Source of the DNA: Scyliorhinus canicula
Lineage: Eukaryota
DNA length: 64,000 nucleotides
Assembly (NCBI RefSeq): GCF_902713615.1
Contig: NC_052150.1
Coordinates: 35,618,297-35,682,296, forward strand
Direction: 5' to 3'
Positions 8,625 through 63,689 of the stretch are shown here, in pieces (positions within the stretch are counted from its first letter, which is position 1; each line of letters starts with the position of its first letter). A program made the position numbers and the translations under genes. The notes below the pieces were generated by a model that ran no database searches, was not told the origin of the DNA, and saw only the letters and a list, made by a program, of their open reading frames with translations.

Positions 8625-9150
8625 TCTTTAACAGCACTTCGCCATTTCTTTTGTCCTCCGTGAGGAACGCACTGCCGAGGCCGCACTTACGTCAACTCAC
8701 AGTGCAGGAAGAGGATTTGGAGATCGGGGCGCCATTTTTAAATGCCGCCCTATCTTTCGACACCTTCACCCATCCCACCGCAACCTCCACTCCACCCCGC
8801 CCGCACCAGCTTACCTCTTAGGGGTCCTCAAACCCCCCCTCAACCCACCACTTAAGGGCAAGGCACCCCGGGCCCAATCCCTGACATGGGCAACCTGGCA
8901 CCTTGGCACTGCTAGCCTGGCACCCTGGCAGTGCCCCTGCCAGCCTGACAGTGCCACCTGGGCACCCTGGCAGTGTCAGGGTGGCATTGGCAGGATGCCT
9001 GGGTGGCACTGCCAAAGTGCCAGGTTGGCAGCGCCAATGTGCACAGCTGTCAGAAGGAGTGCGAGGGTACCACACTGCCCTGAGCCTGACTGCTCAGAGT
9101 CTCTAATGGCCTGGGATACTCTTTGAGGTGTAGGGACACCCACCGTGCTT
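8625..9150. mobile_element. Partial Harbinger-type MITE related to 3411-4093
   Basis: Shared GGCCGCACTTA, GCCATTTT and CCTGGCAGTGCCC motifs. Confidence 0.65.
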
Positions 9151-9410
9151 TTAGGGAGGGAGTTCCAGGATGGTTGCCCCAGCAAACAGTGAAGGAACGG
9201 AGCTATATATCAAAGTCAGGGTGGTGAGTGACTTGGAGGGGAACGTCCAGGTGGTGAGGTTCCCAGGGATCTGCTGCTCTTGTCCTTCTAGATGATAGTG
9301 GTCTTGTTTTTGGAAGGTGCTGTTCAGGGACCTTGGTGAGTTACTGCAGTGCATTTTATAGATGGTACACACGACTGCCACTATTCATCGGTGACGTAGG
9401 GTTTGAATAC
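9150..9410 (-). mobile_element. 3' fragment of the tRNA-headed CR1-group LINE
   Basis: Reverse complement of the 15000-15580 region. Confidence 0.75.
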
Positions 9411-10178
9411 CCCACACTTCATCAATCAGAGTGTTGCCTCTGGTGTTGGTCAGTGGCGTAAGCACCAGAGTCAAGAGCGAGTGTTTACTACATGTTTCTA
9501 GGCAGGTGCAACATGAGGGCTTCAGAAATAGGTGCCAAACTCACATCAGCCATTCATAGGTGGGGCGAGAGGAATGAGGCTCAAGTCATCCTTCTGGGAG
9601 GGGGTGCATAAATAAAGGCGACGTAGTCAGATAATTGGTAGAAAGCGGAAGGACAGGAAGGAGTGAGGTGGGGTGGAGAAATTTAACAGAGTGTGTGAGC
9701 AGGAGAAGATAATTCTAAATTAATTTAAACATTTTGAGGTCAATTACTGCTAGTAATTCGGACTAGTCATCCCAGAAACCCAAGATAATGATCTGGGGGG
9801 CCCGGCTGGTGGAATTTAAACTCAACAAAATATCTGGAACTAAAAATCTAATGATGTCCGTGAAACCATTATCAATTGTCATAAAAACCCATCTGGTCTA
9901 GCCTACATATGTCTCCAGACCCACAGCAATCTGGTTGACTCTTAAATGCCCTCTGAAAGGGCATAGCAAGCCACTCAGTTGTATTCAACTGCTACAAAAA
10001 CATAAAAAAGAAATGAAACCGGCCAGACCACCCGGCATCAAACCAGGCACCGGAAACGACAATCGCAGACCCAGCCCGGTCGACCCTGCAAAGTCCTCCT
10101 TACTAACATCTGGAGGCTTATGCCAAAGTTGGGAGACTGGTTAAACAACAGCCTGACATAGTCATACTCACAGAATCT

Positions 10179-11003
10179 TGGCCGTAAATCAGGGCATGCG
10201 ATCGGGCAGAGAATAACACCCGACGCCGAAATCGCGGCTGACACTGAATCGCGATGCTCCGTCTCCTAAAAAATGGCATAATTGTGACGTAGTTGCAACC
10301 CCGTTTGCATCTCATTAGTAACCCACCCGCGATGCTCCACCTCCGATGGGCCGAGTTCCTGACTGCGTAGTCCTCCTGTGCTCTCAAAGGTCGTGAACCT
10401 GGCGTGGAACCTGAGAGAGGGCGTGCAGACAGTGTCCAGCACCACTATACTTCACCGACAGTCATGCCGCTGGACAGAGGGGCTTCTGCCAGGACTGGGA
10501 GGAGTAGTGGGGGGCCAGGAGGTGGGCTGTGGGGTCGGGGTGTGTGGGTTCGCAACAACATTACCGCAGCCGGCAAGGGCAGCCATGCGGCTGTGCATGC
10601 CATGACAGCCCTCTATAAACCTGGTGCCCTGGGTCGTATTGGTGACCCCCCACCCCCCCATGGCACACCCTTGGGTGCCCTCTGGCCGCAGCGACCCATC
10701 AGCCATGTGGGCGGTCCAGCAGAACCAGTGCCATCTTTCCGGCCGCGATCAGTGTGTGTGTGTGGGGGGGAGGGGTGTATGGTCTGAGCACAGTTGCAGT
10801 TTGTCAGCCCTGCGAGTGCACCATGGACCTGGCGATTCCCACACCATTTTTCATGTATTCTGCTGATGTTCCACAAGGCGCCGGTGCTAGCTGCTCACCG
10901 GTAGCAGAATTGGTGGGGGTGTGGCACTGATCTTTCTAATGTGGAACTCCACGGATCCTCCGTAGGCGTCAGCACTTAGACTCAGGAATGGAGAATCCAG
11001 CCC
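10179..11003. mobile_element. Harbinger-like non-autonomous element inserted in the LINE endonuclease
   Basis: Interrupts ...ILTES | ..TDNIPD; right TIR GGAGAATCCAGCCC. Confidence 0.7.
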
Positions 11004-11532
11004 TTAATCTTTCAGACAATATCCCAGATGGCACAATTACCATTTCTGGGTATGTCCTGTCTCACCGGCTGGACAGACCAAACAGAGGTGGCGGCACAGT
11101 GGTATACAGTCGGGAGGGACTGCTGGGCTCACTTCTTGCTGATTAAAGCCTTAGATTCGGACTACTCCTACGTTTCGTGTCCATTGATTGTGCATCAGTC
11201 CTCAGCATCAACTCTGGACCCCAGGAAGTCTCATGGCTTCAGGTTAAACATGGGAAAGGAAAGCTCCTGCTGATTACCACGTACCGGCCACCATCAGCTA
11301 AAGAATCGGTACTCCTCCATGTTGAACACCACTTGAAGGAAGTACTGAGGATGGCAAGAGCGCAGAATATGCTCTGGGTGAGAGACTTCAATGTCCATCA
11401 CCAAGAGTAGCTCGGTAGTACCACCACAGACCGAACTGGCCAGTTCCTAAAGGACATAGCTGCTAGACTGGGGCTGCAGCAGGTAGTAAGGGGACCAACA
11501 AGAGGAAAACACATACTGGACCTCATCCTCAC

Positions 11533-12418
11533 TCATGAGACCATCAATTCACTCAGAACACGATTGGAAGTAAACTGTGGTTTTAATACTCTTACAACTG
11601 AGCCTGCCTGCGACCAGAAGAACTGAGAGCAGGCTCTCGGCTGCAGCACTTTATACTTCAGGTAGTGGGAGGGGCCATGGGCGGAGCCATGGGTGGAGCC
11701 CTGTACAAGCTCCTCATTTCCCCCTATGGGCAGAGCCGTGCAACGGGTTACAGACAGAGCCCACAAGGACATAATACTATGCAATACAAAACAGTGTTAA
11801 TTACAATACAGTATGAATTCACCACATTCACCCCCTGTAAATAAATCAAGTCCGGCGGGGGTGATGGGCCTACAAGTTGCGCCGGTCCGGTGGCATGGGT
11901 GATGCCCATGGCTCCGCCCTTGCGTGCAGTAGCCTGAGTTCCTGCTCCTCTGTAGTCTCGGATGTGCTTGATTCAGCCAGGTAGGCCATGAAACACCGAA
12001 GCCAGTGTAGGAAGATTTCCTTCGCCTCTGAGCCTGCGGGTCGAGTTCTAGTCGATCAGATTTGAGGACTGATTCCATAGTAGTTGTCTTCAAGTTTTCT
12101 AAGAGTATTAAATTGATGAGACCATCAATTCACTCAGAACACGATGGGAAGTAAACTGTGGTTTTAATACTCTTACAACTGAGCCTGCCTGCGACCAGAA
12201 AAACTGAGAGCAGGCTCACGGCTGCAGCACTTTATACTTCCAGTAGTGGGAGGGGCCATGGGCGGAGCCATGGGCGGAGCAGAAGGTGGAGCCCTGTACA
12301 AGCTCCTCATTTCCCCCTATGGCAGAGCCGCGCAACGGCTCACAGACAGAGCCCACAAGGACATAATACTATGCAATACAAAACAGTGTGAATTACAATA
12401 CAGTATGAATTCACCACA
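11533..12418 (-). mobile_element. Internally deleted Gypsy LTR retrotransposon (two ~300-bp LTRs: 11533-11825 and 12114-12418)
   Basis: Near-identical direct repeats TGTGGTGAAT...CTCATCA on minus; 5-bp TSD CTCAC; gag start MESVLKSDRLELDPQA; purine-rich AGGGGGTGAA before the 3' LTR. Confidence 0.93.
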
Positions 12419-12834
12419 CTCACCAGTCTGCGTGTTGCAGGTGCATCTGCCCATGACAGTCTCGGTAGAAGTGACCACCACACAGTCCTTGTGGAGACAA
12501 AGTCCCATCTCCACAATGAAGATACCCTCCATTGTGCTGTGTGGCACTACCAACATGATAAATGGATTGACTTCAAAGAGATCTAGCAACTCAAGACTGG
12601 GCATCCATGAAGCGCTTTGGGCCATCAGCAGCAGCAGAATTATATTCAACCACAATCTGCAACCTCATGGCCTGGCATATCCCGCACTGTACCATTACCA
12701 CCAAGCCAGGGGATCAACCCTGGTTCAATGAAGAGCGCAGGAGAACATGACCAGGAGCAACATCAAGCATACCGAAAAATGAGGTGGCACCCTGTGAAGC
12801 TACAACATAGGACTACGTGTGTGCCAAACAGTAA

Positions 12835-13069
12835 GGGCAGCATGTGGAAGGGGATAGCACTGGGACTGCCGTGCTGAGGACCTGAGTTTGAATCCCGGCC
12901 CTGGGTCACTGACCGTGTGGAGTTTGCACATTCTCACCATGTCTGCGTGGGTTCCACCCCCACAACCCAAAGATGTGCAGGTTAGGTGGATTGGCCACGC
13001 TAAATTGTCCCTTAATTGGAAAAAATATATAATTGGGTACACTAAGTTTATGTAAACATTTTTTTAAAA
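12835..13069 (+). mobile_element. HE1-like tRNA SINE, A/T-tail variant
   Basis: tRNA B box, V-domain-like body, flanking duplication TGTGTGCCAAACAG. Confidence 0.85.
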
Positions 13070-13304
13070 ATGTGTGCCAAACAGCATAAGCAGCAAGTAA
13101 TAGACAGAGCTAAGCGATTCCACAACCAACACATCAGATCTGAGCTCTGCAATCCTACCACATCCAGCTGTGAATGGTGGTGGACTATTAAACAACTCAC
13201 TGGAGGAGGAGGCTCCACAAATATCCCCATCCTCAATGATGGAGGAACCCAGCACATATGTGCAAAAGACAAGATTGAGGCATTCGCAACAACCTTCAAT
13301 CAGA

Positions 13305-13574
13305 AGTCTGTGCGGAATCTGCACATCCTCCCCGTGTGTGCGTGGGTTTCCTCCGGGTGCTCCGGTTTACTCCCATAGTTCAAAGTTGTGCAGGTTAGGT
13401 GGATTGGCCATGATAAATTGCCTTTAGTGTCCAAAATTGCACTTAGTGTTGGGTGGGGTTACTGGGTTATGGGGATGGGGTGGAGGTGTTGACCTTGGGT
13501 AGGGTGCTCTTTCCAAGAGCTGGTCCAGACTCGATGGGCTGAATGGCCTCCTTCTGCACTGTAAAATCTATGAA
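13305..13574 (+). mobile_element. HE1-like V-SINE, 5' truncated
   Basis: GGGTTTCCTCCGGGTGCTCCGG core; CR1-type tail. Confidence 0.9.
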
Positions 13575-14189
13575 GTGCCGAGTGGAAGATCCATCTCGGT
13601 CTCCTCCAGAGGTCCCCAGCATGACAAATGTAAGTCTTCAGCCAATACGATTCACTCCACGTGATATCATGAAACAACTGAAGGCACTCGATACTGCAAC
13701 GGTTATGGGTCCTGATAATATTCCGGCATTAGTACTGAAGACTTGTGGTCCAGATCTTGCCATACCCCTAGCCAAGCCGTTCCAGTAGAGCTACAACACT
13801 GGCACCTACCCGGCAATATGGAAAGTTGCCTAGGTGTGTCCTGTACACAAGAAACAGGACAAATCCAACTACCGCCCTATCAGTCTACTCTCCATCATCA
13901 GCAAAGTGATGGAAGGAGTCATTAACAGTGCTATCAAGCGGCACTTACTCGGCAATAGCCTGCTCACGGACGCTCAGTTTGGGTTCCCCCTGGGTCACTC
14001 ATCTCCTGACGTCATTACAGCCTTGGTTCAAACATGGACCTACGTGTTGAATGCCAGAGGTGAGGTGAGAGTGACTCCCCTTGACATCAAGGCAGCATTT
14101 GACCGAGTATGGCATCACGGAGCCCTAGCTAAACTGGAGTCAATGGAAATCAGGGGGAAAGCTCTCCGCTGATTGGATTCATACCTGGC

Positions 14190-14380
14190 ACAAAGGATCT
14201 TTCATTCTCACTCCACAGTATAAATATTTCCCACTCTCTCTGTCTGTTAGCTTTGACAAAGAGTCATCGGACTTGAAACGTTAGCTCTTTTCTCTCCCTA
14301 CAGATGCTGCCAGACCTGCTGAGATTTTCCAGCATTGTCCCTTTCGTTTCAGGTTCCAGCATCCGCAGTAATTTTCTTTT
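14190..14380 (+). mobile_element. Penelope/MER6-like short repeat inserted in the LINE RT
   Basis: ..TTGACAAAGAGTCATCGGACTTGAAACG..ACAGATGCTGCCAGACCTGCTGAG..TCCAGCA motif typical of elasmobranch Penelope-related repeats. Confidence 0.6.
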
Positions 14381-14567
14381 ATCCAAGGTGGTTGTGGTGG
14401 TTGATGATCAATCATCTCAGCACCAGGACATCACTGCAGGAGTTCCTCAGGGTAGTGACCTAGACCCAATCGTCTTCCGCTGCTTCATCAACGACCTGCC
14501 TTCCATCATAAGGTCAGAAGTGGGAATGTTTGCGGATGGCTGCATAATGTTGAGCACCATTCGCGAC

Positions 14568-14922
14568 TCATAGATTCATAGCATTTACAGTGCAGAAGGA
14601 GGCCATTCGGCCCATCGAGTCTGCACCGGCTCTTGGAAAGAGCACCCAACCCAAGCCCACACCTCCACCCTATCCCCATAACCCAGTTACCCCTCCCAAA
14701 ACTAAGGGCAATTTTGGACACTAAGGACAATTTAGCATGGCCAAACCACCTAACCTGCACATCTTTGGACTGTGGGAGGAAACCGGAGCACCCGGAGGAA
14801 GCCCACGCACACACGGGGAGAACGTGCAGACTCCGCACAGACAGTGACCCAAGCCGGGTATCGAACCTGGGACCGTGGAGCTGTGATGCAATTGTGCTAA
14901 CCACTATGCTACCGTGCTGCCC
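14568..14922 (-). mobile_element. Full-length HE1-like V-SINE
   Basis: GGGCAGCACGGTAGCATAGTGG A box, GGTTCGATACC B box, CR1-type tail. Confidence 0.93.
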
Positions 14923-15061
14923 ACGGTAATGAAGATAATGAAGCAGACCGCGTCAAAATGCAGCAAGACCTGGACAATATGCAAGCTTGTGCTGACAAGC
15001 AGTAACTCACCAAGGTTCCTTAATCAGCATCTTCCAAACCCACGACCACTACCATCTAGAA

Positions 15062-15456
15062 CAGGGGTGGGCAAACTACGGCCCGCAGGCCGCATGCGGC
15101 CCGCCAAAGGTATTTCTGCGGCCCACCAAGTCATTACAAAAAAAAAAAAAAAATATTTTCTAAAAAAACAAAAATTTTTTTTTTTAAATTTTTTTTTTAA
15201 AGGTTAATGGGTGGGGGGGCTGTTGGATTACTTACTGGCATAGGGTGGATACGTTGACTTGAGTAGGGTGATCATTGCTTGGCACAACGTCGAGGGCCGA
15301 AGGGCCTGTTCTGTGCTGTACTGTTCTATGTTCTATATGAGGCGCCCAGAATCATAACCGGGTGAAGTAATTATTTTACTTAATATACTATGCGGCCCTT
15401 TGTGAATTGTGAATTTCTGAATGCGGCCCTTGCACGGAAAAGTTTGCCCACCCCTG
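15062..15456. mobile_element. hAT (Charlie-like) MITE
   Basis: TIR CAGGGGTGGGCAAACT / AGTTTGCCCACCCCTG; perfect 8-bp TSD ATCTAGAA; subterminal TGCGGCCC repeats. Confidence 0.95.
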
Positions 15457-16232
15457 ATCTAGAAGGACAAGAGCAGCAGATACCTGGGAACCCCACCACC
15501 TGGAGGTTCCCATCCAAGTCATTCACTGACTTAGAAATATATTGCCATTCCTTTGCTGTTGCTGGGACAAAATACTGGAACAATGGGCAATAAATGCTGG
15601 CCTAACCACATCTTGTAAATGAATTTTTAAAAAAACAATTGGAACTGAAAAGAATAAGTGAGCAGAGCTACAGCGAGAATTAAAACTTAAATAATTCAGG
15701 GGAATACTTTGAAGTATCTGAGAACGATAAGCAAGAGCAGAGATAAAAATTACTTGACATTATTTAATTAAATGGTTAGTTATAAATGAAATGAATATTT
15801 TGCTGAAACAACTTAAAGTAAAAAATTCATAAATTATATTGGAAATTGTACATTTGATAAATTGAAGAAAAGAATAATCCAGTTCACAATTTGCATTTCT
15901 GATTTTTAAAAAACGAAATTTGTTTCAAACATTTTTGTATTGTGAAGATTTAACAAAATAGATTGTAGTCCGATCTTTCTAAGGTAAATTGAGTTCATGA
16001 ATTGTATTCAATATTTTAGAAATTCACCTGGAGGCACAATAAGAAAGAAAGAGAGCAGCGAGATTAGCCGTACTGGCCTATGTGGCAGTTTCTGCAATGT
16101 TAGTTCAGGTGTTTATTCCATGACTGAAGTTGTATTTTCAAGAAATCCATTATCATTATGTGTTAGGAGAGATAGTGGAAAGTTCTGGTTCCCATATGAC
16201 AGTACCCATAAGATATTTATGTTACTTTCACC

Positions 16233-32783: not shown

Positions 32784-53500
<20,717 letters not shown>

Positions 53501-54624: not shown

Positions 54625-57600
54625 ATAGAACATAGAACGATACAGCGCAGTACAGGCCCTTCGGCCCTCGATGTTGCACCGACATGGAAAAAAAACTAAA
54701 GGCCATCTAACCTACACTATGCCCTTATCATCCATATGCTTATCCAATAAATTTTTAAATGCCCTCAATGTTGGCGAGTTCACTACTGTTGCAGGTAGGG
54801 CATTCCACGGCCTCACCACTCTTTACGTAAAAAACCAACCTCTGACCTCTGTCCTATATCTATTACCCCTCAATTTAAGGCTATGTCCCCTCGTGCTAGC
54901 CACCTCCATCCGCGGGAGAAGGCTCTCACTGTCCACCCTATCTAACCCTCTGATCATTTTGTATGCCTCTATTAAGTCACCTCTTAACCTTCTTCTCTCT
55001 AACGAAAATAACCTCAAGTCCATCAGCCTTTCCTCATAAGATTTTCCCTCCATACCAGGCAACATCCTGGTAAATCTCCTCTGCACCCGTTCCAAAGCTT
55101 CCACGTCCTTCCTATAATGAGGCGACCAGAACTGTACGCAATACTCCAAATGCGGCCGTACTAGAGTTTTGTACAACTGCAACATGACCTCATGGCTCCG
55201 GAACTCAATCCCTCTACCAATAAAGGCCAACACACCATAGGCCTTCTTCACAACCCTATCAACCTGGGTGGCAACTTTCAGGGATCTATGTACATGGACA
55301 CCGAGATCCCTCTGCTCATCCACACTACCAAGAATTTTACCATTAGCCAAATATTCCGCATTCCTGTTATTCTTTCCAAAGTGAATCACCTCACACTTCT
55401 CCACATTAAACTCCATTTGCCACCTCTCAGCCCAGCTCTGCAGCTTATCTATGTCCCTCTGTAACCTGCAACATCCTTCCGCACTGTCTACAACTCCACC
55501 GACTTTAGTGTCGTCTGCAAATTTACTCACCCATCCTTCTGCGCCCTCCTCTAGGTCATTTATAAAAATGACAAACAGCAACGGCCCCAGAACAGATCCT
55601 TGTGGTACGCCACTCGTAACTGAACTCTATTCTGAACATTTCCCATCAACTACCACTCTCTGTCTTCTTTCAACTAACCAATTTCTGATCCACATCTCTA
55701 AATCACCCTCAATCCCCAGCCTCCGTATTTTCTGCAATAGCCGACCGTGGGGAACCTTATCAAACGCTTTACTGAAATCCATATACACCACATCAACTGC
55801 TCTACCCTCGTCTACCTGTTCAGTCACCTTCTCCATGAACTCGATAAGGTTTGTGAGGCATGACCTACCCTTCACAAAACCATGCTGACTATCCCTAATC
55901 ATATTATTCCTATCTAGATGATTAGAAATCGTATCTTTTATAATCCTCTCCAAGACCTTACCCACCACAGACGTTAGGCTCACCGGCCTATAGTTACCGG
56001 GGTTATCTCTACTCCCCTTCTTGAACAAAGGGACCACATTTGCTATCCTCCAGTCCTCTGGCACTATTCCTGTAGCCAATGATGACCTAAAAATCATAGC
56101 CAAAGGCTCAGCAATCTCTTCCCTGGCTTCCCAGAGAATCCTAGGATAAATCCCATCCGGCCCCGGGGACTTATCTATTTTCACCTTGTCCAGAATTGCC
56201 AACACTTCTTCCCTACGCACCTCAATGCCATCTATTCTAATAGCCTGGGTCTCAGCATTCTCCTCCACAATATTATCTTTTTCTTGAGTGAATACTGACA
56301 AAGTATTCATTTAGTATCTCGCTTATCTCCTCAGCCTCCACACACAACTTCCCACCACTGTCCTTGACTGGCCCTACTCTTACCCTAGTCATTCTTTTAT
56401 TCCTGACATACCTATAGAAAGCTTTTGGGTTTTCCTTGATCCTACCTGCCAAAGACTTCTCATGTCCCCTCCTTGCTCGTCTCAGCTCTCTCTTTAGATC
56501 CTTCCTCGCTTCCTTGTAACTATCAAGCGCCCCAACTGAAACTTCACGCCTCATCTTCACATAGGCCTCCTTCTTCCTCTTAACAAGAGATTCCACTTCT
56601 TTGGTAAACCACGGTTCCCTCGCTCGACCCCTTCCTCCCTGCCTGACTGGTACGTACTTATCAAGAACATGCAATAGCTGTTCCTTGAACAAGCTCCACA
56701 TATCCAGTGTGCCCAACCCTTGCAGCCTACTTCTCCAACCAACACATCCTAAGTCATGTCTAATGGCATCATAATTGCCCTTCCCCCAGCTATAACTCTT
56801 GCCCTGCAGGGTATACTTATCCCTTTCCATCACTAACGTAAAGGTCACCGAATTGTGGTCACTGTTTCCAAAGTGCTCACCTACCTCCAAATCTAACACC
56901 TGGCCTGGTTCATTACCCAAAACCAAATCCAATGTGGCCTCGCCTCTTGTTGGCCTGTCAACATATTGTGTCAGGAAACCCTCCTGCACACATTGTACAA
57001 AGAACGACCCATCTAATGTACTCGAACTATATCTTTTCCAGTCAATATTTGGAAGTTAAAGTCTCCCATAACAACTACCCTGTTACTTTCGCTCTTTTCC
57101 AGAATCATCTTCGCCATCCTTTCCTCTACATCGCTAGAACTATTAGGTGGCCTATAGAAAACTCCCAACAGGGTGACCTCTCCTTTCCTGTTTCTAACCT
57201 CAGCCCATACTACCTCAGAAGAAGAGTCCCTATCTAGCATCCTTTCCGCCACCGTAATACTGTCCTTGACTAGCAGCGCCACACCTCCCCCTCTTTTGCC
57301 CCCTTCTCTGAGCTTACTAAAACACCTAAACCCCAGAACCTGCAATAACCATTCCTGTCCCTGCTCTATCCATGTCTCTGAAATGGCCACAACGTCGAAG
57401 TCCCAGGTACCAACCCATGCTGCCAGTTCCCCTACCTTATTTCGTATACTCCTGGCATTGAAGTAGACACACTTCAAACCACCTACCTGAACACTGGCAC
57501 CCTCCTGCGAAGTCAAATCTGTGCTCCTGACCTCTATACTCTCAATCTCCCGTACCCCAAAACTACAATCCAGGTTCCCATGCCCCTGCTGAATTAGTTT

Positions 57601-58934
57601 AAACCCCCCCCAAAGAGCACTAACAAATCTCCCCCCCAGGATATTGGTGCCCCTCAGGTTCAGATGTAGACCATCCTGTCTATAGAGGTCCCACCTTCCC
57701 CAGAAAGAGCCCCAGTTATCCAGAAATCTGAATCCCTCCCGCCTGCACCATCCCTGTAGCCACGTGTTTAATTGCTCTCTCTCCCTATTCCTCATCTCAC
57801 TATCACGTGGCACGGGCAACAACCCAGAGATAACAACTCTGTTTGTTCTCGCTCTGAGCTTCCATCCTAGCTCCCTAAAGGCCTGCCTGACATCCTTGTC
57901 CCCTTTCCTACCTATGTCGTTAGTGCCAATGTGGACTACGACTTGGGGCTGCTCCCCCTCCCCCTTAAGGACCCGGAAAACACGATCCGAGACATCACTT
58001 ACCCTTGCACCTGGGAGGCAACATACCAAACGTGAGTCTCTCTCGCTCCCACAAAATCTCCTATCTGTGCCCCTGACTATTGAGTCCCCAATTACTAATG
58101 TTCTACTCCTTTCCCCCCTTCCCTTCTGAGCAACAGGGACAGACTCCGTGCCAGAGGCCCGTACCCCATGGCTTACCCCTGGTAAGTCGTCCCCCCCACA
58201 AGTATCCAAAACGGTATACTTGTTACTCAGGGGAACGACCGCAGGGGGTCCCTGCACTGACTGCTTCTTCCCAGTCCCTCTTACAGTTACCCATCTATCT
58301 CCAGTCTTTGGTGTAACTACTTCCCTGAAGCTCCTATCTATGACCCCCTCTGCCTCCCGAATGATCCGAAGTTCATCCAGCTCAAGCTCCAGGTCCCTAA
58401 CACAGTTTTTGAGGAGCTGGAGTTGGGTGCACTTCCCACAGATGAAATCAGCAGGGACACTGACGGCGTCCCTCACCTCAAACATTCTGCAGGAGGAGCA
58501 TTGTACTGCCTTCCCTGACATCACCTCTAGATTAAAAAAAACAAGAAAAAGAAAGGAAGAGCTTACCTGATATTACCTCAAACCCTGCTCCCGCTGAAAG
58601 TTAAGCAAATTTAAAGGCACTCACTCACCTTCACGACAGGCCCCTGCTCCCGCTTCCCAACCACCGTGGGGTTTCGGGTTTAACTGTCACTTGCCAACAG
58701 CCCCTCCACAAACCACCTTCAACTTAGGCTGACCGCACTGCACGTATGCAAATTCCCCCAGAACAGCTGATCAGTAGCTCTGCTCTGCTGCCCTCTGCTG
58801 GATGCTTGTCTTCACTCAAACTCCTTGGGTCTCCTTCGCCGGTTCCCCTTCAACTTAGGCTGACCGCACTGCACGTATGCAAATTCCCCCAGAACAGCTG
58901 ATCAGTAGCTCTGCTCTGCTGCCCTCTGCTGGAT
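54625..58934 (-). mobile_element. Near full-length young CR1 LINE (HER1-like): 5' UTR repeats, ORF1 (Zn finger/coiled coil + GDSL esterase), ORF2 (APE + RT) with about 3 frameshifts, TTCTATG-type tail
   Basis: CSSC..CGKC, LVIGDSIV, HIGTND, DGLHLN; YFNARSI, GDFN, SDHN, SPGPDGI, YMDFSKAFDKVPH, KFADDTK, LVRPHLEYC. Confidence 0.97.
57013..58524 (-). CDS. CR1 ORF1 (esterase-type) read in frame into the ORF2 endonuclease in this copy
   Basis: 503-aa ORF: SGNH/GDSL esterase motifs followed by APE motifs. Confidence 0.8.
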   Translation of the reverse strand: MMSGKAVQCSSCRMFEVRDAVSVPADFICGKCTQLQLLKNCVRDLELELDELRIIREAEGVIDRSFREVVTPKTGDRWVTVRGTGKKQSVQGPPAVVPLSNKYTVLDTCGGDDLPGVSHGVRASGTESVPVAQKGRGERSRTLVIGDSIVRGTDRRFCGSERDSRLVCCLPGARVSDVSDRVFRVLKGEGEQPQVVVHIGTNDIGRKGDKDVRQAFRELGWKLRARTNRVVISGLLPVPRDSEMRNREREQLNTWLQGWCRREGFRFLDNWGSFWGRWDLYRQDGLHLNLRGTNILGGRFVSALWGGFKLIQQGHGNLDCSFGVREIESIEVRSTDLTSQEGASVQVGGLKCVYFNARSIRNKVGELAAWVGTWDFDVVAISETWIEQGQEWLLQVLGFRCFSKLREGGKRGGGVALLVKDSITVAERMLDRDSSSEVVWAEVRNRKGEVTLLGVFYRPPNSSSDVEERMAKMILEKSESNRVVVMGDFNFQILTGKDIVRVH

Positions 58935-59334: not shown

Positions 59335-62060
59335 TATATCATATGTGTGCTGGTGGACACCTCTGTGATCCACAGCAACAGCAGCTTGAGAAACTTTGGC
59401 TCAGAGTTGATGAACTAAAGTCCGAGCTTTGGATGCTGTGATGCATCAGAGAGAGGGAAAGTTGCTTGTGCGCTTTGTTCCGACTTGGAGTAACACCCCT
59501 TATGCTACGTATTTTTAATTTGATCACTGGTGTTGGATAGGAGGGTGTGACTGTGAGTGAGGAAGGTATGGGGATCCAGAGGTAGCACTGGAGAGCATCG
59601 GGCCTTTCAGTTTTCTGACTAATTTGATGCTCTTGTAGCTTGTGTGAATGAGAGCAGGGATTGCAGAAAGAATGAGCATGGATGGTTTGATTTATTGTCA
59701 CGTGTACTGAGGTACCGTGAAAAGTATTGTTCTGCATACAGTCCAAACAGATCATTCCATATGTGAAACATATGGCATACATAAATACACAGACACTGAC
59801 ATTGGGTGAAGCTTAAGGAGTGTGGGGCTACTCTGTATAGGAGATGTGTGGAGCGCTCAGTTTAGACCATAAGAGGATCATTCAGGAATCTGGTAATGGC
59901 AGGGAACAAGCTGTTTTTTAACCTGTTGGTGCATGTTCTGAGACTTTTGTATTTCCTGACCGATGGAAGAGGTTGGAAGATGACCACGGCACTGTGGTGA
60001 AGGGGTGGAGTTAAATGCAATGTAAGTGTAGTTGGAAATAGTATAGTCAGGAGGTTGGATGCAGTTCTCTACATCAGCTATCTGCCCAATGTCAGAGTTG
60101 AGGAGATCTCCTTGGAACTGGAGAGGAGTGGGAGGGGAAGGATTCAGTGGCGTGGTCCATGTGGGTACCAATTACATCGGTCGGGCTGAGAAAGAGGTTC
60201 TAGTCAGGGAGTATGAACAGCTGGAACTTTATTAAAAGGCACAAAAAAGTAATATCTGGATTTCTACCTGAGCCATGAGTAAATTGGTATAGGGTAAATA
60301 AGATTCGAGAGCTGAACGCATGGCTCAAGATAAATGTGGGAGAAATGGGTTTCAATTCATGGGGCACTGGCACCAGTACTGGTGCTGTAAGGCTTCTTAC
60401 CAGTACTGGGGAAAGAGGTAGTTGTGACAATCTTCACCTGAATAATTCTGGAACAATGGTCTGGGGAATCAAATAACTAGAGCTGGAGAGTGGACTTTAA
60501 AATAAATAGCCAGGGAAAAGATTTGAGAGGGGAGATGTGGAAAGTGAAACAGGACAAGGCAATAGCATAATAACTGAGTCTAACTGGAACAGAATATATA
60601 AACATCAGTATAGGCAAAAATGGTAAAAAGACAGAATTAAAAGCTCCTTATCCAAACAAGATGGATGAATTGATAGCACAAATAAATATAAATGAGTATG
60701 ATATGTTGGCCATTATGGGAGGAGGGGTGGTTGCAAGGTGACTAAGAGTGGAGACTGAATATTATAATAATCGCTTATTGTCACAAGTAGGCTTCAATGA
60801 AGTTACTGTGAAAAGCCACTAGTCACCACATTCTGGCATCTGTTTGGGGAGGCTGGTACGGAAATTGAACCTGCGCTGCTTGGTCTTGTTCTGCACTACA
60901 AGCCAGCTGTTTAGCCCACTGCTGTATTCAAAATTTCAGAAAGACTGGAGGAAAGAAAAAGGAGGTAGAATACATCTGTTTGAAATGATGCAACCAGTGT
61001 AATAATGAGAAATGGTCATGCTTCAGAAAGTTTTTAAGATGTAGAATCAGTTTGGGTGGGGATAAATAGCAAAGGAAAGAAATCACTGGTCGGCATACTT
61101 TATAGGCCATCTAAAAGCAGCTCACGATAGGACGGAGTACACATCAAGAAATAATAGAGGGCTTGCAAGAAAGGTACTGCAATAATCGTGTGACTTTAAT
61201 CTTCATGTTCATTGGACAGATCAAATTTGCAAAGGTAGCCTGGAGGTTAAGCTCGTAGGGTATATTCAGGACAGTTTCTTAGAATAAAACATTCTGCAAC
61301 ATACCAGGCTGCTTTGGACCTGGTAATGTGTCATGAGGCAAGATTAATTAAAGACTTCATAGTAAAAGATCCACCGTGCACGATTGATCATAATGTGATA
61401 AAATTTCGCAGTTTGAAAGTGAGGATTGTGGGTCCATAATTAGAGTTTTAAATTAAAACAAATACGAGGGTGTGAAGGCAGATTAACTAGTGTGGACTGG
61501 GTGAAGAGGTTAAAATTTAAGGCTGGAGAAGCCTTGGTAGGGAAAACAAGTTGTGAAGATGCAGAGATATAGTAGGTGAAGTGAGAGGAAAACAGTTGGC
61601 AGATGGAGCATTCTATGTAAAAACGTGAACTTGCATGCACTCGGGAGTAATAGAAAAGCAGAATATTATCTAAATGGAGAGAGATTGCAGAATGTTGCAG
61701 TACAGGGGATCTGGGGATCCTGTACAATACATGAATCACAAAGTCAGCGTGCAGGTTCAGCAAGTAACTAGGGAGGCAAATACAATGTTGGACCTTATTG
61801 CAAGGGGGTTATAAAAGTAGAGAGGTCTTGCTACATTAGATATTGGTGAGACCAGGCCGAGAGCACTATGCACATTTTTGGTCATGTTGCTGCAGGAGGG
61901 ATACACTTCCATTGGGAGCAGTTCAGAGAATGTGTCCTGAGACTAGGATTTAATAAAAGATTGAGTAGGTTGGGCCTTTACTCACATCGGATTTAGAAGA
62001 ATGAGAGGTGATTTTATTGAAATGTACACGATTGAGGGGATTTGACAGGTAGATGCTGAA
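59335..62060 (+). mobile_element. Old decayed CR1 (ORF1 esterase, EN, RT 3' part), interrupted by a Rex1 fragment (59683-59990, minus) and a SINE
   Basis: LWLRVDEL, VVHVGTN, VISGFLPEP, LYRPS, DHNVI remnants. Confidence 0.8.
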
Positions 62061-62067
62061 ACTCTGC

Positions 62068-62415
62068 CTTAGTAATCCAGAGGCCCCGTCTAATGTTGTG
62101 ACGTTAAGGGTTCAACGCTCACCACGGCAGCTGGTGAAATTTGAATTCCGTTAATAAATCTGGTATAATAAAGCTAGTCACAGTAATGATGATCGTGACA
62201 ACTATCATCGATTGTTGTAAAAACCAATCTGGCTCACTGATGTCCTTTTAGGGAAGGAAATCTGCTGTCCTGACCCAATCTGGCTTATGATGCCAGACCC
62301 ACAGAAAAATGATTGACTTAACTGCCACTGAAATGGCCTTGCGAGCCACTTGGTTCAAGGCAATTCAGGATGCACAAAAATACTGGCTTTACCAGTGGTG
62401 CCCATGTTCATGAAT
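62068..62415 (+). mobile_element. Short element made of the 5' head/body and 3' tail of the tRNA-headed LINE
   Basis: Body matches 9760-9980; last ~60 nt match the LINE tail at 15580-15625 and 38010-38075. Confidence 0.8.
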
Positions 62416-63689
62416 TGTACTTATCGCTCTGCCACTGAGAGTGACTGCCCTGTAACTATTCAGGAAAGGTGAGCAGGAAACCAGGGGATTATAAACAGGT
62501 TACCTTAATATCTCTTACTAATAAATTACCTCGGTGTGTAATCGAAGATGAACACCTTTCAGATTGTCAAGTGATCAGAGAGCCAACAGCAAAGGGTAGG
62601 TCACGTTTGATGAATCTGTTTGACGTTTTTGAAAATGGGACTGAAGTAGTGGACAATTGTATGTCTCTGGCTGTTATTCATATAAGTTTTGGAACACATT
62701 TGATGAAGGCTAAAACTCATGCATTGAGAACAGGTTATTGATCAGGTGAGGAAATTAGCTGAGAAACAGGAGATAGAGAGGACAATGGACAGATACTATA
62801 ATTGTAGGTTGTGACTAGTGGTGACCATCGGAATTTCTGATGGGGCTCCAGTTACTTAGCCTATTAATGCTCTGAGAAGGTGGTGGTGAGCCATCTTCTT
62901 GAACTGCCGCAGTCCCTGTGGTATAGGTAGACCTATAGTGCTGTTAGGAAGAGTGCTCCAGGCCTTTAACCCAATGACAGTGAGGGAATTGCAGCTATAT
63001 TTGGTTTGTGACTTGGAGGGGAGTTTCGAGTTAGGGTGGTCACCATATATCCGTTACCCTTGCCCTTCAAGGTGGAAGAGGTCACTGGTTTAGAAGAAGC
63101 TGTCCAAGGACCTGGGCAAGTTGCTGCATTGCATCTTGCAAATAGTACACACTGATGCAACCGTGCATCAGTGATCGTAGGAGTCAATGTTTAGGGTGGT
63201 GGGTGAGGTGCCAAATAAGTAGCCACTTTCATCTGGATATTATCGACCTTCTCAAGTGTTGTTGGAGGTACATTTATTTAGGTAAGTGGAGAATGTTCCA
63301 TCACACTTCTGGTGACTTGTTGATGGCAGATAGGCTTTGGAGAAGCAGGAGATGAGTTATTTATGGCAGAATTGTGTGGCACAGTTGTTACTTCCACTTA
63401 CCCGCCCAAGCCTGTATATTGTCCAGGCCTTGGAGATGTGGGCAGGGAACTCCTCATTATCTCAAGTATTGCAAATGGAACTGAATGCTGTACCGTCACC
63501 ATCAATCATCTCCACTCCTGGGAAGGCTATTGATGTAGCAGCTGATGATGGTTAGGTCGAGGACACTGCTCTGAAGAACCCCTGCAATGATACCCAGTGG
63601 GGCTGAGCTGATTGGCCTCCATCTGTAAGCATCTTCCTTTTGTGCTCGGTATGACTCCAGCCAAAAAAAAGAGTTCCCCCTGGTACTAG

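What the first reader, a model, noticed from the sequence alone, without database searches (positions are those of the whole stretch)
9749..10140. ORF1-less LINE with a tRNA-derived head, plus its short 5'+3' derivative
Seen: the EN-RT LINE at 9749-15635 begins with the same ~250-300 nt found in stand-alone short elements (33556-33693 + 36317-36480, with B box GGTTCAAATCC; 62068-62415). Only ~100 nt of linker separates this from the endonuclease, leaving no room for ORF1. A second, more diverged LINE copy (50170-50520) has the same body-linker-EN junction, so this is not a chance adjacency. The short element at 62068 switches after GCCACT..GTT to the LINE's own 3' tail (GGCAATT..GGATG..AAATGCTGGC..CCATG). 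Inference: an autonomous LINE that acquired a tRNA-like, Pol III-type 5' end, with the 'SINE' being its internal deletion product. This blurs the SINE/LINE boundary and raises the question of how a multi-kb coding RNA is transcribed and translated from such a promoter. LINE-derived SINE bodies have precedent; I cannot tell whether this family is described.
Basis: partly seen in the sequence, partly recalled or inferred. Interest (0 to 1): 0.7.

Follow-up and report, generated by a model that had tools for sequence, protein, structure and literature searches.

The report
Shark LINE carrying its SINE's head
An old, broken single-gene jumping element (a CR1-group LINE) in a shark-like genome starts with the same tRNA-like head and body as an abundant short element (SINE) and ends with the same tail. 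Other copies repeat this layout, which links the origin of the SINE to the LINE, but nothing yet shows that RNA polymerase III makes the long RNA.

Summary
The first ~230-250 nt of the degraded EN-RT LINE at ~9731/9749-15623 match two stand-alone SINE copies in the window (nhmmer E 2e-14 and 2e-13). The match reaches into the SINE's tRNA-like anticodon-arm region. About 110 nt then lead into the endonuclease, so there is no ORF1.

The body-linker-EN junction is not a chance adjacency. It recurs in a second, older copy (50172-, E 4e-16). It also recurs in at least nine contig records, 15-19% diverged from the window copy, from DNA runs of two samples (some may be the same locus). Hundreds of contigs leave the LINE path at exactly 9980 and continue into the SINE/LINE tail.

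Family sequences lack T runs on the sense strand only: 0 TTTT in 5.5 kb, and Phe codons TTC:TTT = 24:4. Two other LINEs in the window do not show this. It is compatible with Pol III transcription but does not prove it.

Poly(A)-selected RNA shows no specific LINE expression. This copy has lost the B box.

ORF1-less CR1-group LINEs are known. SINE bodies made from LINE 5' parts are reported only for RTE and Vingi. This scan flagged the same architecture at 9 or more other places in this genome.

Verdict: real, probably undescribed variant; the Pol III reading is untested.

The parts
9731..9802 (+). LINE1 tRNA-like part of the head. The 5' limit is uncertain (9731-9756). The B-box region is deleted near 9798-9803.
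   Evidence: nhmmer alignment starts at 9760. The anticodon-arm stretch against SINE A is reached by 1 of 1000 shuffles. MAFFT alignment. No Rfam tRNA hit in this decayed copy.
9803..9980 (+). LINE1 part homologous to the SINE body, with a ~40-nt deletion at 9897.
   Evidence: Very high contig depth over 9902-9964 and loose ends at 9893/9897 that restore the missing stretch.
9981..10090 (+). LINE-specific linker (5' UTR end and probable ORF start); no ORF1.
   Evidence: At least nine diverged contig records bridge body-linker-EN (table 8). The same linker is in LINE2 and in L001. Stops in the EN frame upstream.
10091..10177 (+). Start of the endonuclease (KVLLTNIW...QQPDIVILTE); interrupted at 10178 by a foreign insert.
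   Evidence: Translation. P0001/L001 are homologous. The loose end at 10177 continues the EN sequence.
11009..11534 (+). Endonuclease domain, continued after the 10178-11008 insert.
   Evidence: Translation. Weak Pfam Exo_endo_phos_2 hit. Fragment hits at 56-74% identity.
12425..13304 (+). EN-RT spacer region, interrupted by a SINE at ~12839-13085.
   Evidence: Translation matches L003. Nested repeats mapped by self-blast.
13578..15002 (+). Reverse transcriptase, interrupted at 14189-14385 and 14571-14935. The C-terminal part of the RT is deleted after ~15002.
   Evidence: Pfam RVT_1, 61 bits for 13834-14169 and 21.8 bits for 14382-14570..
15003..15623 (+). LINE1 3' region and tail (foreign insert at 15062-15455). 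It ends ...GGGCAATAAATGCTGGCC...AAATGAAT.
   Evidence: The tail motif matches the SINE-type continuation read at 9980.
33553..33693 (+). SINE A, 5' half: tRNA-like head with B box GGTTCAAATCC. Split by a 5'-truncated L1-type insert.
   Evidence: Rfam tRNA 18.5 bits, E 0.16, below gathering..
36322..36480 (+). SINE A, 3' half (body and start of tail). TCTATGAT is duplicated on either side of the L1-type insert.
62037..62420 (+). SINE B: head, body and LINE-type tail.
50172..52436 (+). LINE2: an older copy (72-78% identical to LINE1) with the same body-linker-EN order. No recognisable tRNA part.
9130..9400 (-). Separate 3' fragment of a LINE of the same family, in opposite orientation, just upstream of LINE1.

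Best explanation
This is a dead copy of a single-ORF (endonuclease + reverse transcriptase) CR1-group LINE family. The family's 5' untranslated region is homologous to the tRNA-derived head and body of its partner SINE, and the two share a 3' tail.

The SINE corresponds to the LINE's 5' ~250-330 nt joined directly to its last ~70 nt. It is therefore a 'bipartite' deletion derivative that kept the two ends. The tail is the part the LINE's reverse transcriptase has to recognise. The head supplies an internal promoter, so the SINE can be made by Pol III.

The long element was retrotransposed with the head as part of its RNA. Which polymerase made that RNA is not known.

Shown: the homology, the recurrence of the junction, the absence of ORF1, and the coincident breakpoint at 9980.

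Inferred: the direction of derivation (LINE to SINE), and that the head serves as the LINE's promoter or 5' end.
For: - Head and body homology.
- The same body-linker-EN order in LINE2 and in at least nine contig records, 15-19% diverged from the window copy, from two DNA runs (table 8).
- An independent copy, L001, carries the same linker and EN start.
- The SINE-type path leaves at 9980 in 196/272 contigs and runs into the tail motif present at LINE1's 3' end (table 7).
- About 14-19% of the word depth at 9965-9985 continues into the LINE linker, so headed LINE copies are numerous (table 2).
- No prominent alternative upstream junction appears among the best-supported loose ends.
- EN and RT identity.
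- No open frame upstream of the linker.
- ORF1-less CR1-group elements are common in vertebrates (PMC13343379).
Against: - Only one window copy (LINE1) shows the tRNA-like part joined to the LINE. It is decayed there: no Rfam tRNA hit and the B box is deleted.
- Contig depth over the linker is about 4-fold lower than over the EN start. This could reflect faster divergence of non-coding sequence. It could also mean that related LINE subfamilies have other 5' ends.
- LINE1's own tail is partly deleted, so the 3' breakpoint in the LINE could not be read in the window.
- No full-length copy from elsewhere could be fetched.
Confidence: 0.75

Rival explanations
1. Pol III-driven LINE. The tRNA-like head, with its A and B boxes, is (or was) the working promoter of the full-length coding RNA. 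The element has been purged of Pol III terminators (T runs). This refines the best explanation rather than excluding it.
For: - Sense-strand T runs are missing in family sequences. TTTT is 0 in 5,464 nt, against 8.7 expected by composition and 4.9 from dinucleotides. TTT is 15, against 55 and 30 expected. A runs are as expected (41 against 41).
- Three other LINE sequences in the same window show no depletion (27 against 31 expected).
- The depletion holds at synonymous sites. Phe TTC:TTT is 24:4, against 55% C-ending in other NNY codons (P 6e-4), and 37:52 in the controls.
- The head sits at the very 5' end, and there is no ORF1.
Against: - There is no RNA evidence. In two poly(A)-selected runs the linker and EN are covered by ~1-16 reads, and the RNA/DNA ratio is of the same order as for the SINE body.
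- The window copy has lost the B box.
- Given the TTT count, the absence of TTTT is not significant in itself (1.2 expected).
- The pooled copies overlap and are related, so the counts are not independent.
- A run depletion in the coding part (4 against 10.7) hints at a more general avoidance of homopolymers.
- A ~3.5-kb uncapped Pol III mRNA has no precedent that I know of.
- The tail carries an AATAAA.
Confidence: 0.2
2. SINE first. An older tRNA-SINE (head plus conserved body) existed already, and the LINE later captured its head and body, for example by a template switch at the end of reverse transcription. On this view the SINE is not a deletion product of this LINE.
For: - The body core (9902-9964) has 10-100 times more contig depth than its surroundings.
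- Several SINE subfamilies leave it at other points (9938, 9951, 9953), so the module is shared by many SINE lineages.
- An earlier scan note reports the same kind of head with three different LINE-type tails in this genome (s1-233985; not tested here).
- SINE/LINE chimaeras made by template switching are documented for L1 (bioRxiv 10.1101/2025.02.02.635956).
Against: - The capture breakpoint in the SINE would have to coincide exactly with the SINE's own body/tail boundary (9980). Under internal deletion this coincidence costs nothing.
- Template-switch chimaeras normally keep the SINE's 3' tail, which is absent from the LINE head.
- The two histories are not exclusive. An old SINE head could have been captured first, and a new SINE then made by deletion.
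Confidence: 0.3
3. One-off event: a SINE inserted by chance next to a 5'-truncated LINE, or a single chimaeric insertion, or an assembly artefact.
For: The window is dense with nested repeats.
Against: - The same junction is present in LINE2, in L001 (linker and EN) and in many diverged contigs from two samples.
- The SINE tail is missing at the junction.
- Contigs at 99% identity or more cover the locus in independent runs (table 1).
Confidence: 0.03

Closest known systems
SINEs and bipartite non-autonomous LINEs built from the 5' and 3' parts of RTE or Vingi LINEs (Bov-tA, WALLSI, SINE2-1_ACar; Kojima 2018, PMC5786205)
   Same: The short element's middle body matches the 5' region of its partner LINE, and its tail matches the LINE's 3' end. 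Origin by internal deletion is the proposed route.
   Different: That survey found only RTE and Vingi 5' regions in SINE bodies. Here the partner is a CR1-group LINE. In those cases the tRNA head belongs to the SINE only, whereas here the autonomous LINE itself carries the tRNA-like part.
HE1 SINE / HER1 LINE of sharks and rays (Ogiwara et al. 1999; listed as a V-SINE with partner HER1 in PMC3747384)
   Same: A tRNA-derived SINE of elasmobranchs that shares its 3' tail with a LINE.
   Different: Identity with HE1/HER1 could not be tested, because no reference sequence was at hand and the papers are not held. I know of no report that HER1 begins with the SINE head; that statement rests on my own knowledge.
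ORF1(-) CR1-group elements (Zenon, Rex1, L2 clade B; PMC13343379)
   Same: A single ORF with APE and RT and no ORF1. Such elements are abundant in elasmobranchs.
   Different: That survey mentions 5' repeat arrays in some ORF1(-) elements. It does not mention tRNA at all and mentions SINE once.
ingi/RIME and L1Tc/NARTc of trypanosomes (own knowledge; named in Kojima 2018 as bipartite derivatives)
   Same: The short non-autonomous partner consists of the two ends of the autonomous element and shares its 5' promoter region.
   Different: There is no tRNA-derived, Pol III-type head. It is a different LINE clade and host.
Small-RNA/LINE and Alu/LINE-1 chimaeric insertions (bioRxiv 10.1101/2025.02.02.635956)
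   Same: A Pol III-type RNA sequence is joined 5' of LINE sequence within one insertion.
   Different: Those are single dead-end insertions, usually with a 5'-truncated LINE and the complete small RNA or SINE. Here the junction is fixed in a propagating family and sits at the full-length 5' end.

Membership tests
CR1-group (Jockey-superfamily) LINE | A single polyprotein with an N-terminal apurinic-type endonuclease and an RT domain | tested here: met
   RVT_1 at 61 bits (above cut-off). Weak Exo_endo_phos and Exo_endo_phos_2 hits on fragments. EN motifs read in translation. 33% identity to the RT of the esterase-bearing CR1 in the same window.
CR1-group (Jockey-superfamily) LINE | Placement in a named clade (CR1, L2, Rex1, Zenon) by RT phylogeny | not tested
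   No reference RT set was at hand, and only stop-broken fragments are available.
ORF1(-) structural variant of CR1-group elements | No ORF upstream of the EN-RT ORF | tested here: met
   About 110 nt lie between the end of SINE homology and the first EN motif. Stops in the EN frame upstream in LINE1 and LINE2. The same short linker is in L001 and in bridging contigs.
tRNA-derived SINE (SINE2) | A head derived from a tRNA, with A and B boxes | tested here: inconclusive
   SINE A: Rfam tRNA 18.5 bits against gathering 29, E 0.16, full-length model match with a good B box. ARAGORN calls nothing there. The tRNA species is unresolved.
tRNA-derived SINE (SINE2) | A 3' tail shared with a partner LINE | tested here: met
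   The SINE-type continuation at 9980 contains the motif found at LINE1's 3' end. The direct SINE B against LINE1 tail alignment is weak.
Bipartite non-autonomous LINE derivative | It consists only of the 5' and 3' parts of the autonomous element | tested here: inconclusive
   The 5' side is met. On the 3' side, the LINE stretch just upstream of the tail is deleted in LINE1 and absent from the other fragments, so the exact 3' breakpoint is unread.
Pol III-transcribed gene (type 2 promoter) | Intact A and B boxes at the 5' end of the transcribed unit | tested here: not met
   The B-box region is deleted in LINE1, and LINE2 has no recognisable tRNA part. This holds for these dead copies only; the family state is unknown.
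Pol III-transcribed gene (type 2 promoter) | No T4+ terminator inside the unit | tested here: met
   0 TTTT in 2,665 nt of LINE1 and in 5,464 nt pooled. This covers only part of the element.
Pol III-transcribed gene (type 2 promoter) | Transcripts that start at the head and depend on Pol III | not testable with these tools
   Only poly(A)-selected runs were offered. They show no LINE-specific signal.
HE1 SINE / HER1 LINE; V- or Deu-domain SINE superfamilies | Sequence identity to the published consensus or conserved central domain | not testable with these tools
   No reference sequences were available. Ogiwara 2002 is not held.

The most novel reading that the evidence does not exclude
An autonomous, protein-coding LINE that is transcribed by RNA polymerase III from a tRNA-derived internal promoter. 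Its coding strand has been purged of T runs to let Pol III read through ~3.5 kb. Its partner SINE arises simply by internal deletion.
Probability: 0.2. Interest if true: 0.9.

Novelty: new variant of a known kind. Interest (0 to 1): 0.6.

Why it matters
How tRNA heads, anonymous bodies and LINE tails come together to form SINEs is an old open question. A LINE that itself carries the head and body, next to a SINE that equals its two ends, would give a one-step route: internal deletion. It would extend the idea that SINE bodies come from LINE 5' parts beyond RTE and Vingi to the CR1 group, the dominant LINEs of sharks.

The strand-specific and synonymous-site avoidance of T runs makes a sharper question testable. 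That question is whether a coding retrotransposon can use, or at least tolerate, Pol III transcription.

If Pol II drives it instead, the case shows a SINE-type head serving as a LINE 5' UTR or promoter. That would bear on why conserved SINE domains persist.

Tried and rejected
- **Word search with the EN piece:** no candidates.
- **Exhaustive representative search:** only 11 short fragments and no full-length ORF2.
- **Look-ups of those fragments:** P0004 and P0005 are not on record. L001 (687 nt) has only 92 nt upstream, which is the linker. L002 and L003 are 5'-truncated inside EN.
- **Word search with P0001:** it returned gene models without contigs.
- **Exact-pattern scans** of metagenome and viral contigs with two EN-start patterns: nothing.
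- **Findings look-up by sequence:** blank.
- **Rfam at gathering threshold:** nothing in the window.
- **A 31-nt tail pattern typed from memory:** no match in the window, because both tails here are decayed.
- **Literature:** five searches found no description of a CR1-group LINE with a SINE head. The HE1/HER1 and V-SINE papers are not held.
- **Chance adjacency and a one-off chimaera:** rejected, table 8, and on LINE2.
- **An ORF starting inside the head:** rejected.
- **Candidate target-site duplication** (TTTAAA at 9724-9729 and 15626-15631): too short and AT-rich to count as evidence.

Full report
**What is there.** The window comes from a repeat-rich, shark-like genome. The runs that hold it are coded organism A. 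Between about 9731/9749 and 15623 on the + strand lies an old LINE copy, here called LINE1.

Translation in pieces gives an apurinic-type endonuclease start (KVLLTNIW...QQPDIVILTE), the rest of the endonuclease, a spacer, and a reverse transcriptase. Pfam gives RVT_1 at 61 bits and weak endonuclease hits on the fragments.

The copy is riddled with nested insertions:
- 10178-11008;
- a pair of 92.6% identical direct repeats with the sequence between them, at 11535-12424;
- SINEs at ~12839-13085, 13305-13577 and 14571-14935;
- inserts at 14189-14385 and 15062-15455.

It has also lost the C-terminal part of the RT and part of its tail.

**The observation.** The 5' ~230-250 nt of LINE1 are homologous to two stand-alone short elements. 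SINE A (33553-33693 + 36322-36480) is split by a 5'-truncated L1-type insertion. SINE B lies at about 62037-62420.

blastn finds four segments of 77-84% identity. nhmmer aligns SINE A positions 26-292 to 9760-9961 (E 2.2e-14) and the LINE1 head to SINE B 62073-62365 (E 2e-13).

The alignment reaches into the SINE's tRNA-like region. The anticodon-arm stretch of SINE A against LINE1 ~9759-9798 is matched by only 1 of 1000 shuffles (alignments).

SINE A's head gives a full-length but sub-threshold tRNA match (Rfam 18.5 bits, gathering 29, E 0.16) with a good B box. LINE1 gives none, because the B-box region is deleted in it. The first ~20 nt of the head align poorly, so LINE1's exact 5' end is uncertain (9731-9756).

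**No ORF1.** Homology to the SINEs ends at 9980. The first conserved endonuclease motif starts at about 10091. The endonuclease frame has several stops further upstream in both LINE copies. ORF1-less elements are usual in parts of the CR1 group (Zenon, Rex1, L2 clade B, and secondary losses in CR1) (PMC13343379). This feature alone is therefore ordinary.

**Not a chance adjacency.** Three lines of evidence support this.

1. A second copy, LINE2 (50172-~52436), is 72-78% identical to LINE1 in coding parts. It has the same body-linker-endonuclease order (E 4.4e-16).
2. An unrelated public contig, L001, carries the same linker directly before the same endonuclease start. It was reached through the protein fragment P0001.
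3. I laid Logan contigs of two DNA runs from different samples (X1, X6) on window:9650-10250 at 80% likeness.
   - At least nine listed records, each differing from the window copy at 15-19% of positions, span from the SINE-like body (from 9891-9952) through the linker into the endonuclease (to 10051-10136), with 31 or more letters on both sides of 9980 (table 8). Some may be the same locus in the two individuals, so the number of distinct copies is lower.
   - 196 (X1) and 272 (X6) contigs leave the window copy at exactly 9980 and continue with one common sequence (table 7). That sequence is the SINE tail, and its later part is present at LINE1's 3' end (~15585-15603).
   - About 14-19% of the summed word depth at 9965-9985 continues into the LINE-type linker (table 2). 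Headed LINE copies are therefore numerous.
   - No strong alternative upstream junction appears among the best-supported loose ends.

There are caveats. Depth over the linker is about four times lower than over the endonuclease start. Faster divergence of non-coding sequence could explain this, and so could related LINE subfamilies with other 5' ends. About 1,000 weaker loose ends were not shown. The stretch 9755-9796 attracts almost no contigs, so the read data say nothing about the tRNA-like part.

**Direction of derivation.** The SINE's similarity to the LINE 5' end stops at the same base (9980) where the contigs turn into the tail motif that LINE1 carries in part at its 3' end. An internal deletion, or an intramolecular template jump, in a headed LINE explains this without any coincidence. 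Capture of a SINE head by the LINE would need the breakpoint to fall exactly on the SINE's body/tail border.

This is an inference, because LINE1's own 3' region is partly deleted and I could not read the 3' breakpoint in the LINE.

The body core (9902-9964) is shared by far more elements than its surroundings. Several SINE subfamilies leave it at 9938, 9951 or 9953. The head-body module may therefore be older than this LINE and may have been captured earlier. The two histories are compatible.

**Polymerase.** The family sequences pooled were LINE1's LINE-derived segments, LINE2, and L001-L003, 5,464 nt in all.

| Measure | Family | Expected or comparison |
|---|---|---|
| TTTT on the sense strand | 0 | 8.7 by composition; 4.9 from dinucleotides |
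| TTT on the sense strand | 15 | 55 by composition; 30 from dinucleotides |
| AAAA on the sense strand (= TTTT on the antisense) | 41 | 41 |
| TTTT in three other LINE sequences of the window (controls) | 27 | 31 |
| Phe codons TTC:TTT | 24:4 | 55% C-ending in all other NNY codon pairs (P 6e-4); 37:52 in the controls |

This strand-specific, partly synonymous avoidance of T runs is what Pol III read-through would require. It is still weak evidence, for these reasons:
- The pooled copies are related and overlap.
- Given so few TTT, the absence of TTTT adds nothing (1.2 expected).
- A runs are also low in LINE1's coding part (4 against 10.7).
- Other pressures on U-rich tracts are conceivable.

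Directly, nothing supports Pol III. In two poly(A)-selected RNA runs the linker and endonuclease are covered by about 1-16 reads in mixed orientation. The RNA-to-DNA depth ratio is of the same order as for the SINE body. This looks like passive transcription of scattered copies. The tail also contains an AATAAA.

**Translation start.** Most contigs read G where the window has C at 10064, which gives an ATG at 10062-10064 (table 3). L001 has this ATG too. In both LINE1 and L001 this ATG is out of frame with the endonuclease and runs into a stop after about 15 codons. The two copies differ by a 3-nt indel between the ATG and the endonuclease start, which keeps that frame relation. I could not find the real start codon of the long ORF in these decayed copies.

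**Comparison with what is known.** Kojima (2018, PMC5786205) showed that LINE 5' regions contribute to SINE bodies. He found this only for RTE and Vingi. He argued that the bipartite derivatives are made by Pol II and the SINEs by Pol III. Here the partner belongs to the CR1 group, and the autonomous element itself carries the tRNA-like part.

Sharks and rays have a published tRNA-derived SINE/LINE pair with a common tail, HE1/HER1, listed as a V-SINE (PMC3747384). I could not test whether this is that pair. The 2026 survey of CR1-group elements describes ORF1(-) forms and 5' repeat arrays, but no tRNA or SINE-like head. SINE/LINE chimaeras made by template switching are known as single insertions, not as a propagating family.

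Five literature searches found no description of this architecture. Repbase and Dfam could not be consulted.

**Earlier notes of this scan.** The same architecture was flagged at nine or more other places in this genome, so the scan has found this before on other DNA. Two follow-ups concluded that it is real and that Pol III is untested. My results agree. They add the read-based evidence for the junction across the genome, the coincident breakpoint, and the control-matched T-run and codon tests.

**Limits.** No full-length copy from outside the window could be obtained.

**Verdict.** It is a probably undescribed variant of the known LINE/SINE module-sharing theme. Interest 0.6.

Noticed in passing
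window 10062-10109; L001 33-80: Most family contigs and L001 have an ATG at 10062-10064, where the window has ATC. In LINE1 and L001 it is out of frame (+1) with the endonuclease and stops after ~15 codons. A 3-nt indel between the two copies keeps this frame relation. It may be a uORF or a vestige of an ORF1 end. The start of the long ORF was not found.
   Followed up: partly
window 11535-12424: An insert inside LINE1 consists of two ~300-nt direct repeats (11535-11832 and 12116-12424, 92.6% identical) around ~280 nt. It looks like a miniature LTR element.
   Followed up: no
window 36808-36885 (-): ARAGORN's only call, tRNA-His (GTG), lies within repeat-like sequence. It is probably the head of another tRNA-derived SINE family rather than a tRNA gene.
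   Followed up: no
window 54823-58524 (-): A nearly intact CR1-type LINE with long ORFs of 503, 238, 227 and 252 aa. The first ORF looks like an esterase-type ORF1 running on into the endonuclease. It has only 33% RT identity to LINE1 and a normal T-run content. It served as a control.
   Followed up: partly
window 33694-36321 (+): A 5'-truncated L1-type LINE (ORFs of 207, 259 and 247 aa) with a poly(A) end is inserted into SINE A. TCTATGAT is duplicated on both sides.
   Followed up: partly
window 10178-11008: An insert in LINE1's endonuclease, of unknown type. It is moderately repeated in the genome (contig depth ~430-600 at 10196-10237).
   Followed up: no
window 9902-9964: A ~60-nt core of the SINE body has 10-100 times the contig depth of its flanks, and several SINE subfamilies leave it at different points. 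It is a candidate for a highly conserved SINE domain (V or Deu). It was not compared with references.
   Followed up: partly
window 9724-9730 and 15626-15636: TTTAAA(C) directly before the possible head start and TTTAAAAAAAC directly after the LINE's AAATGAAT end. This is a possible target-site duplication for insertion of head plus LINE as one piece. It is too AT-rich and short to weigh.
   Followed up: partly
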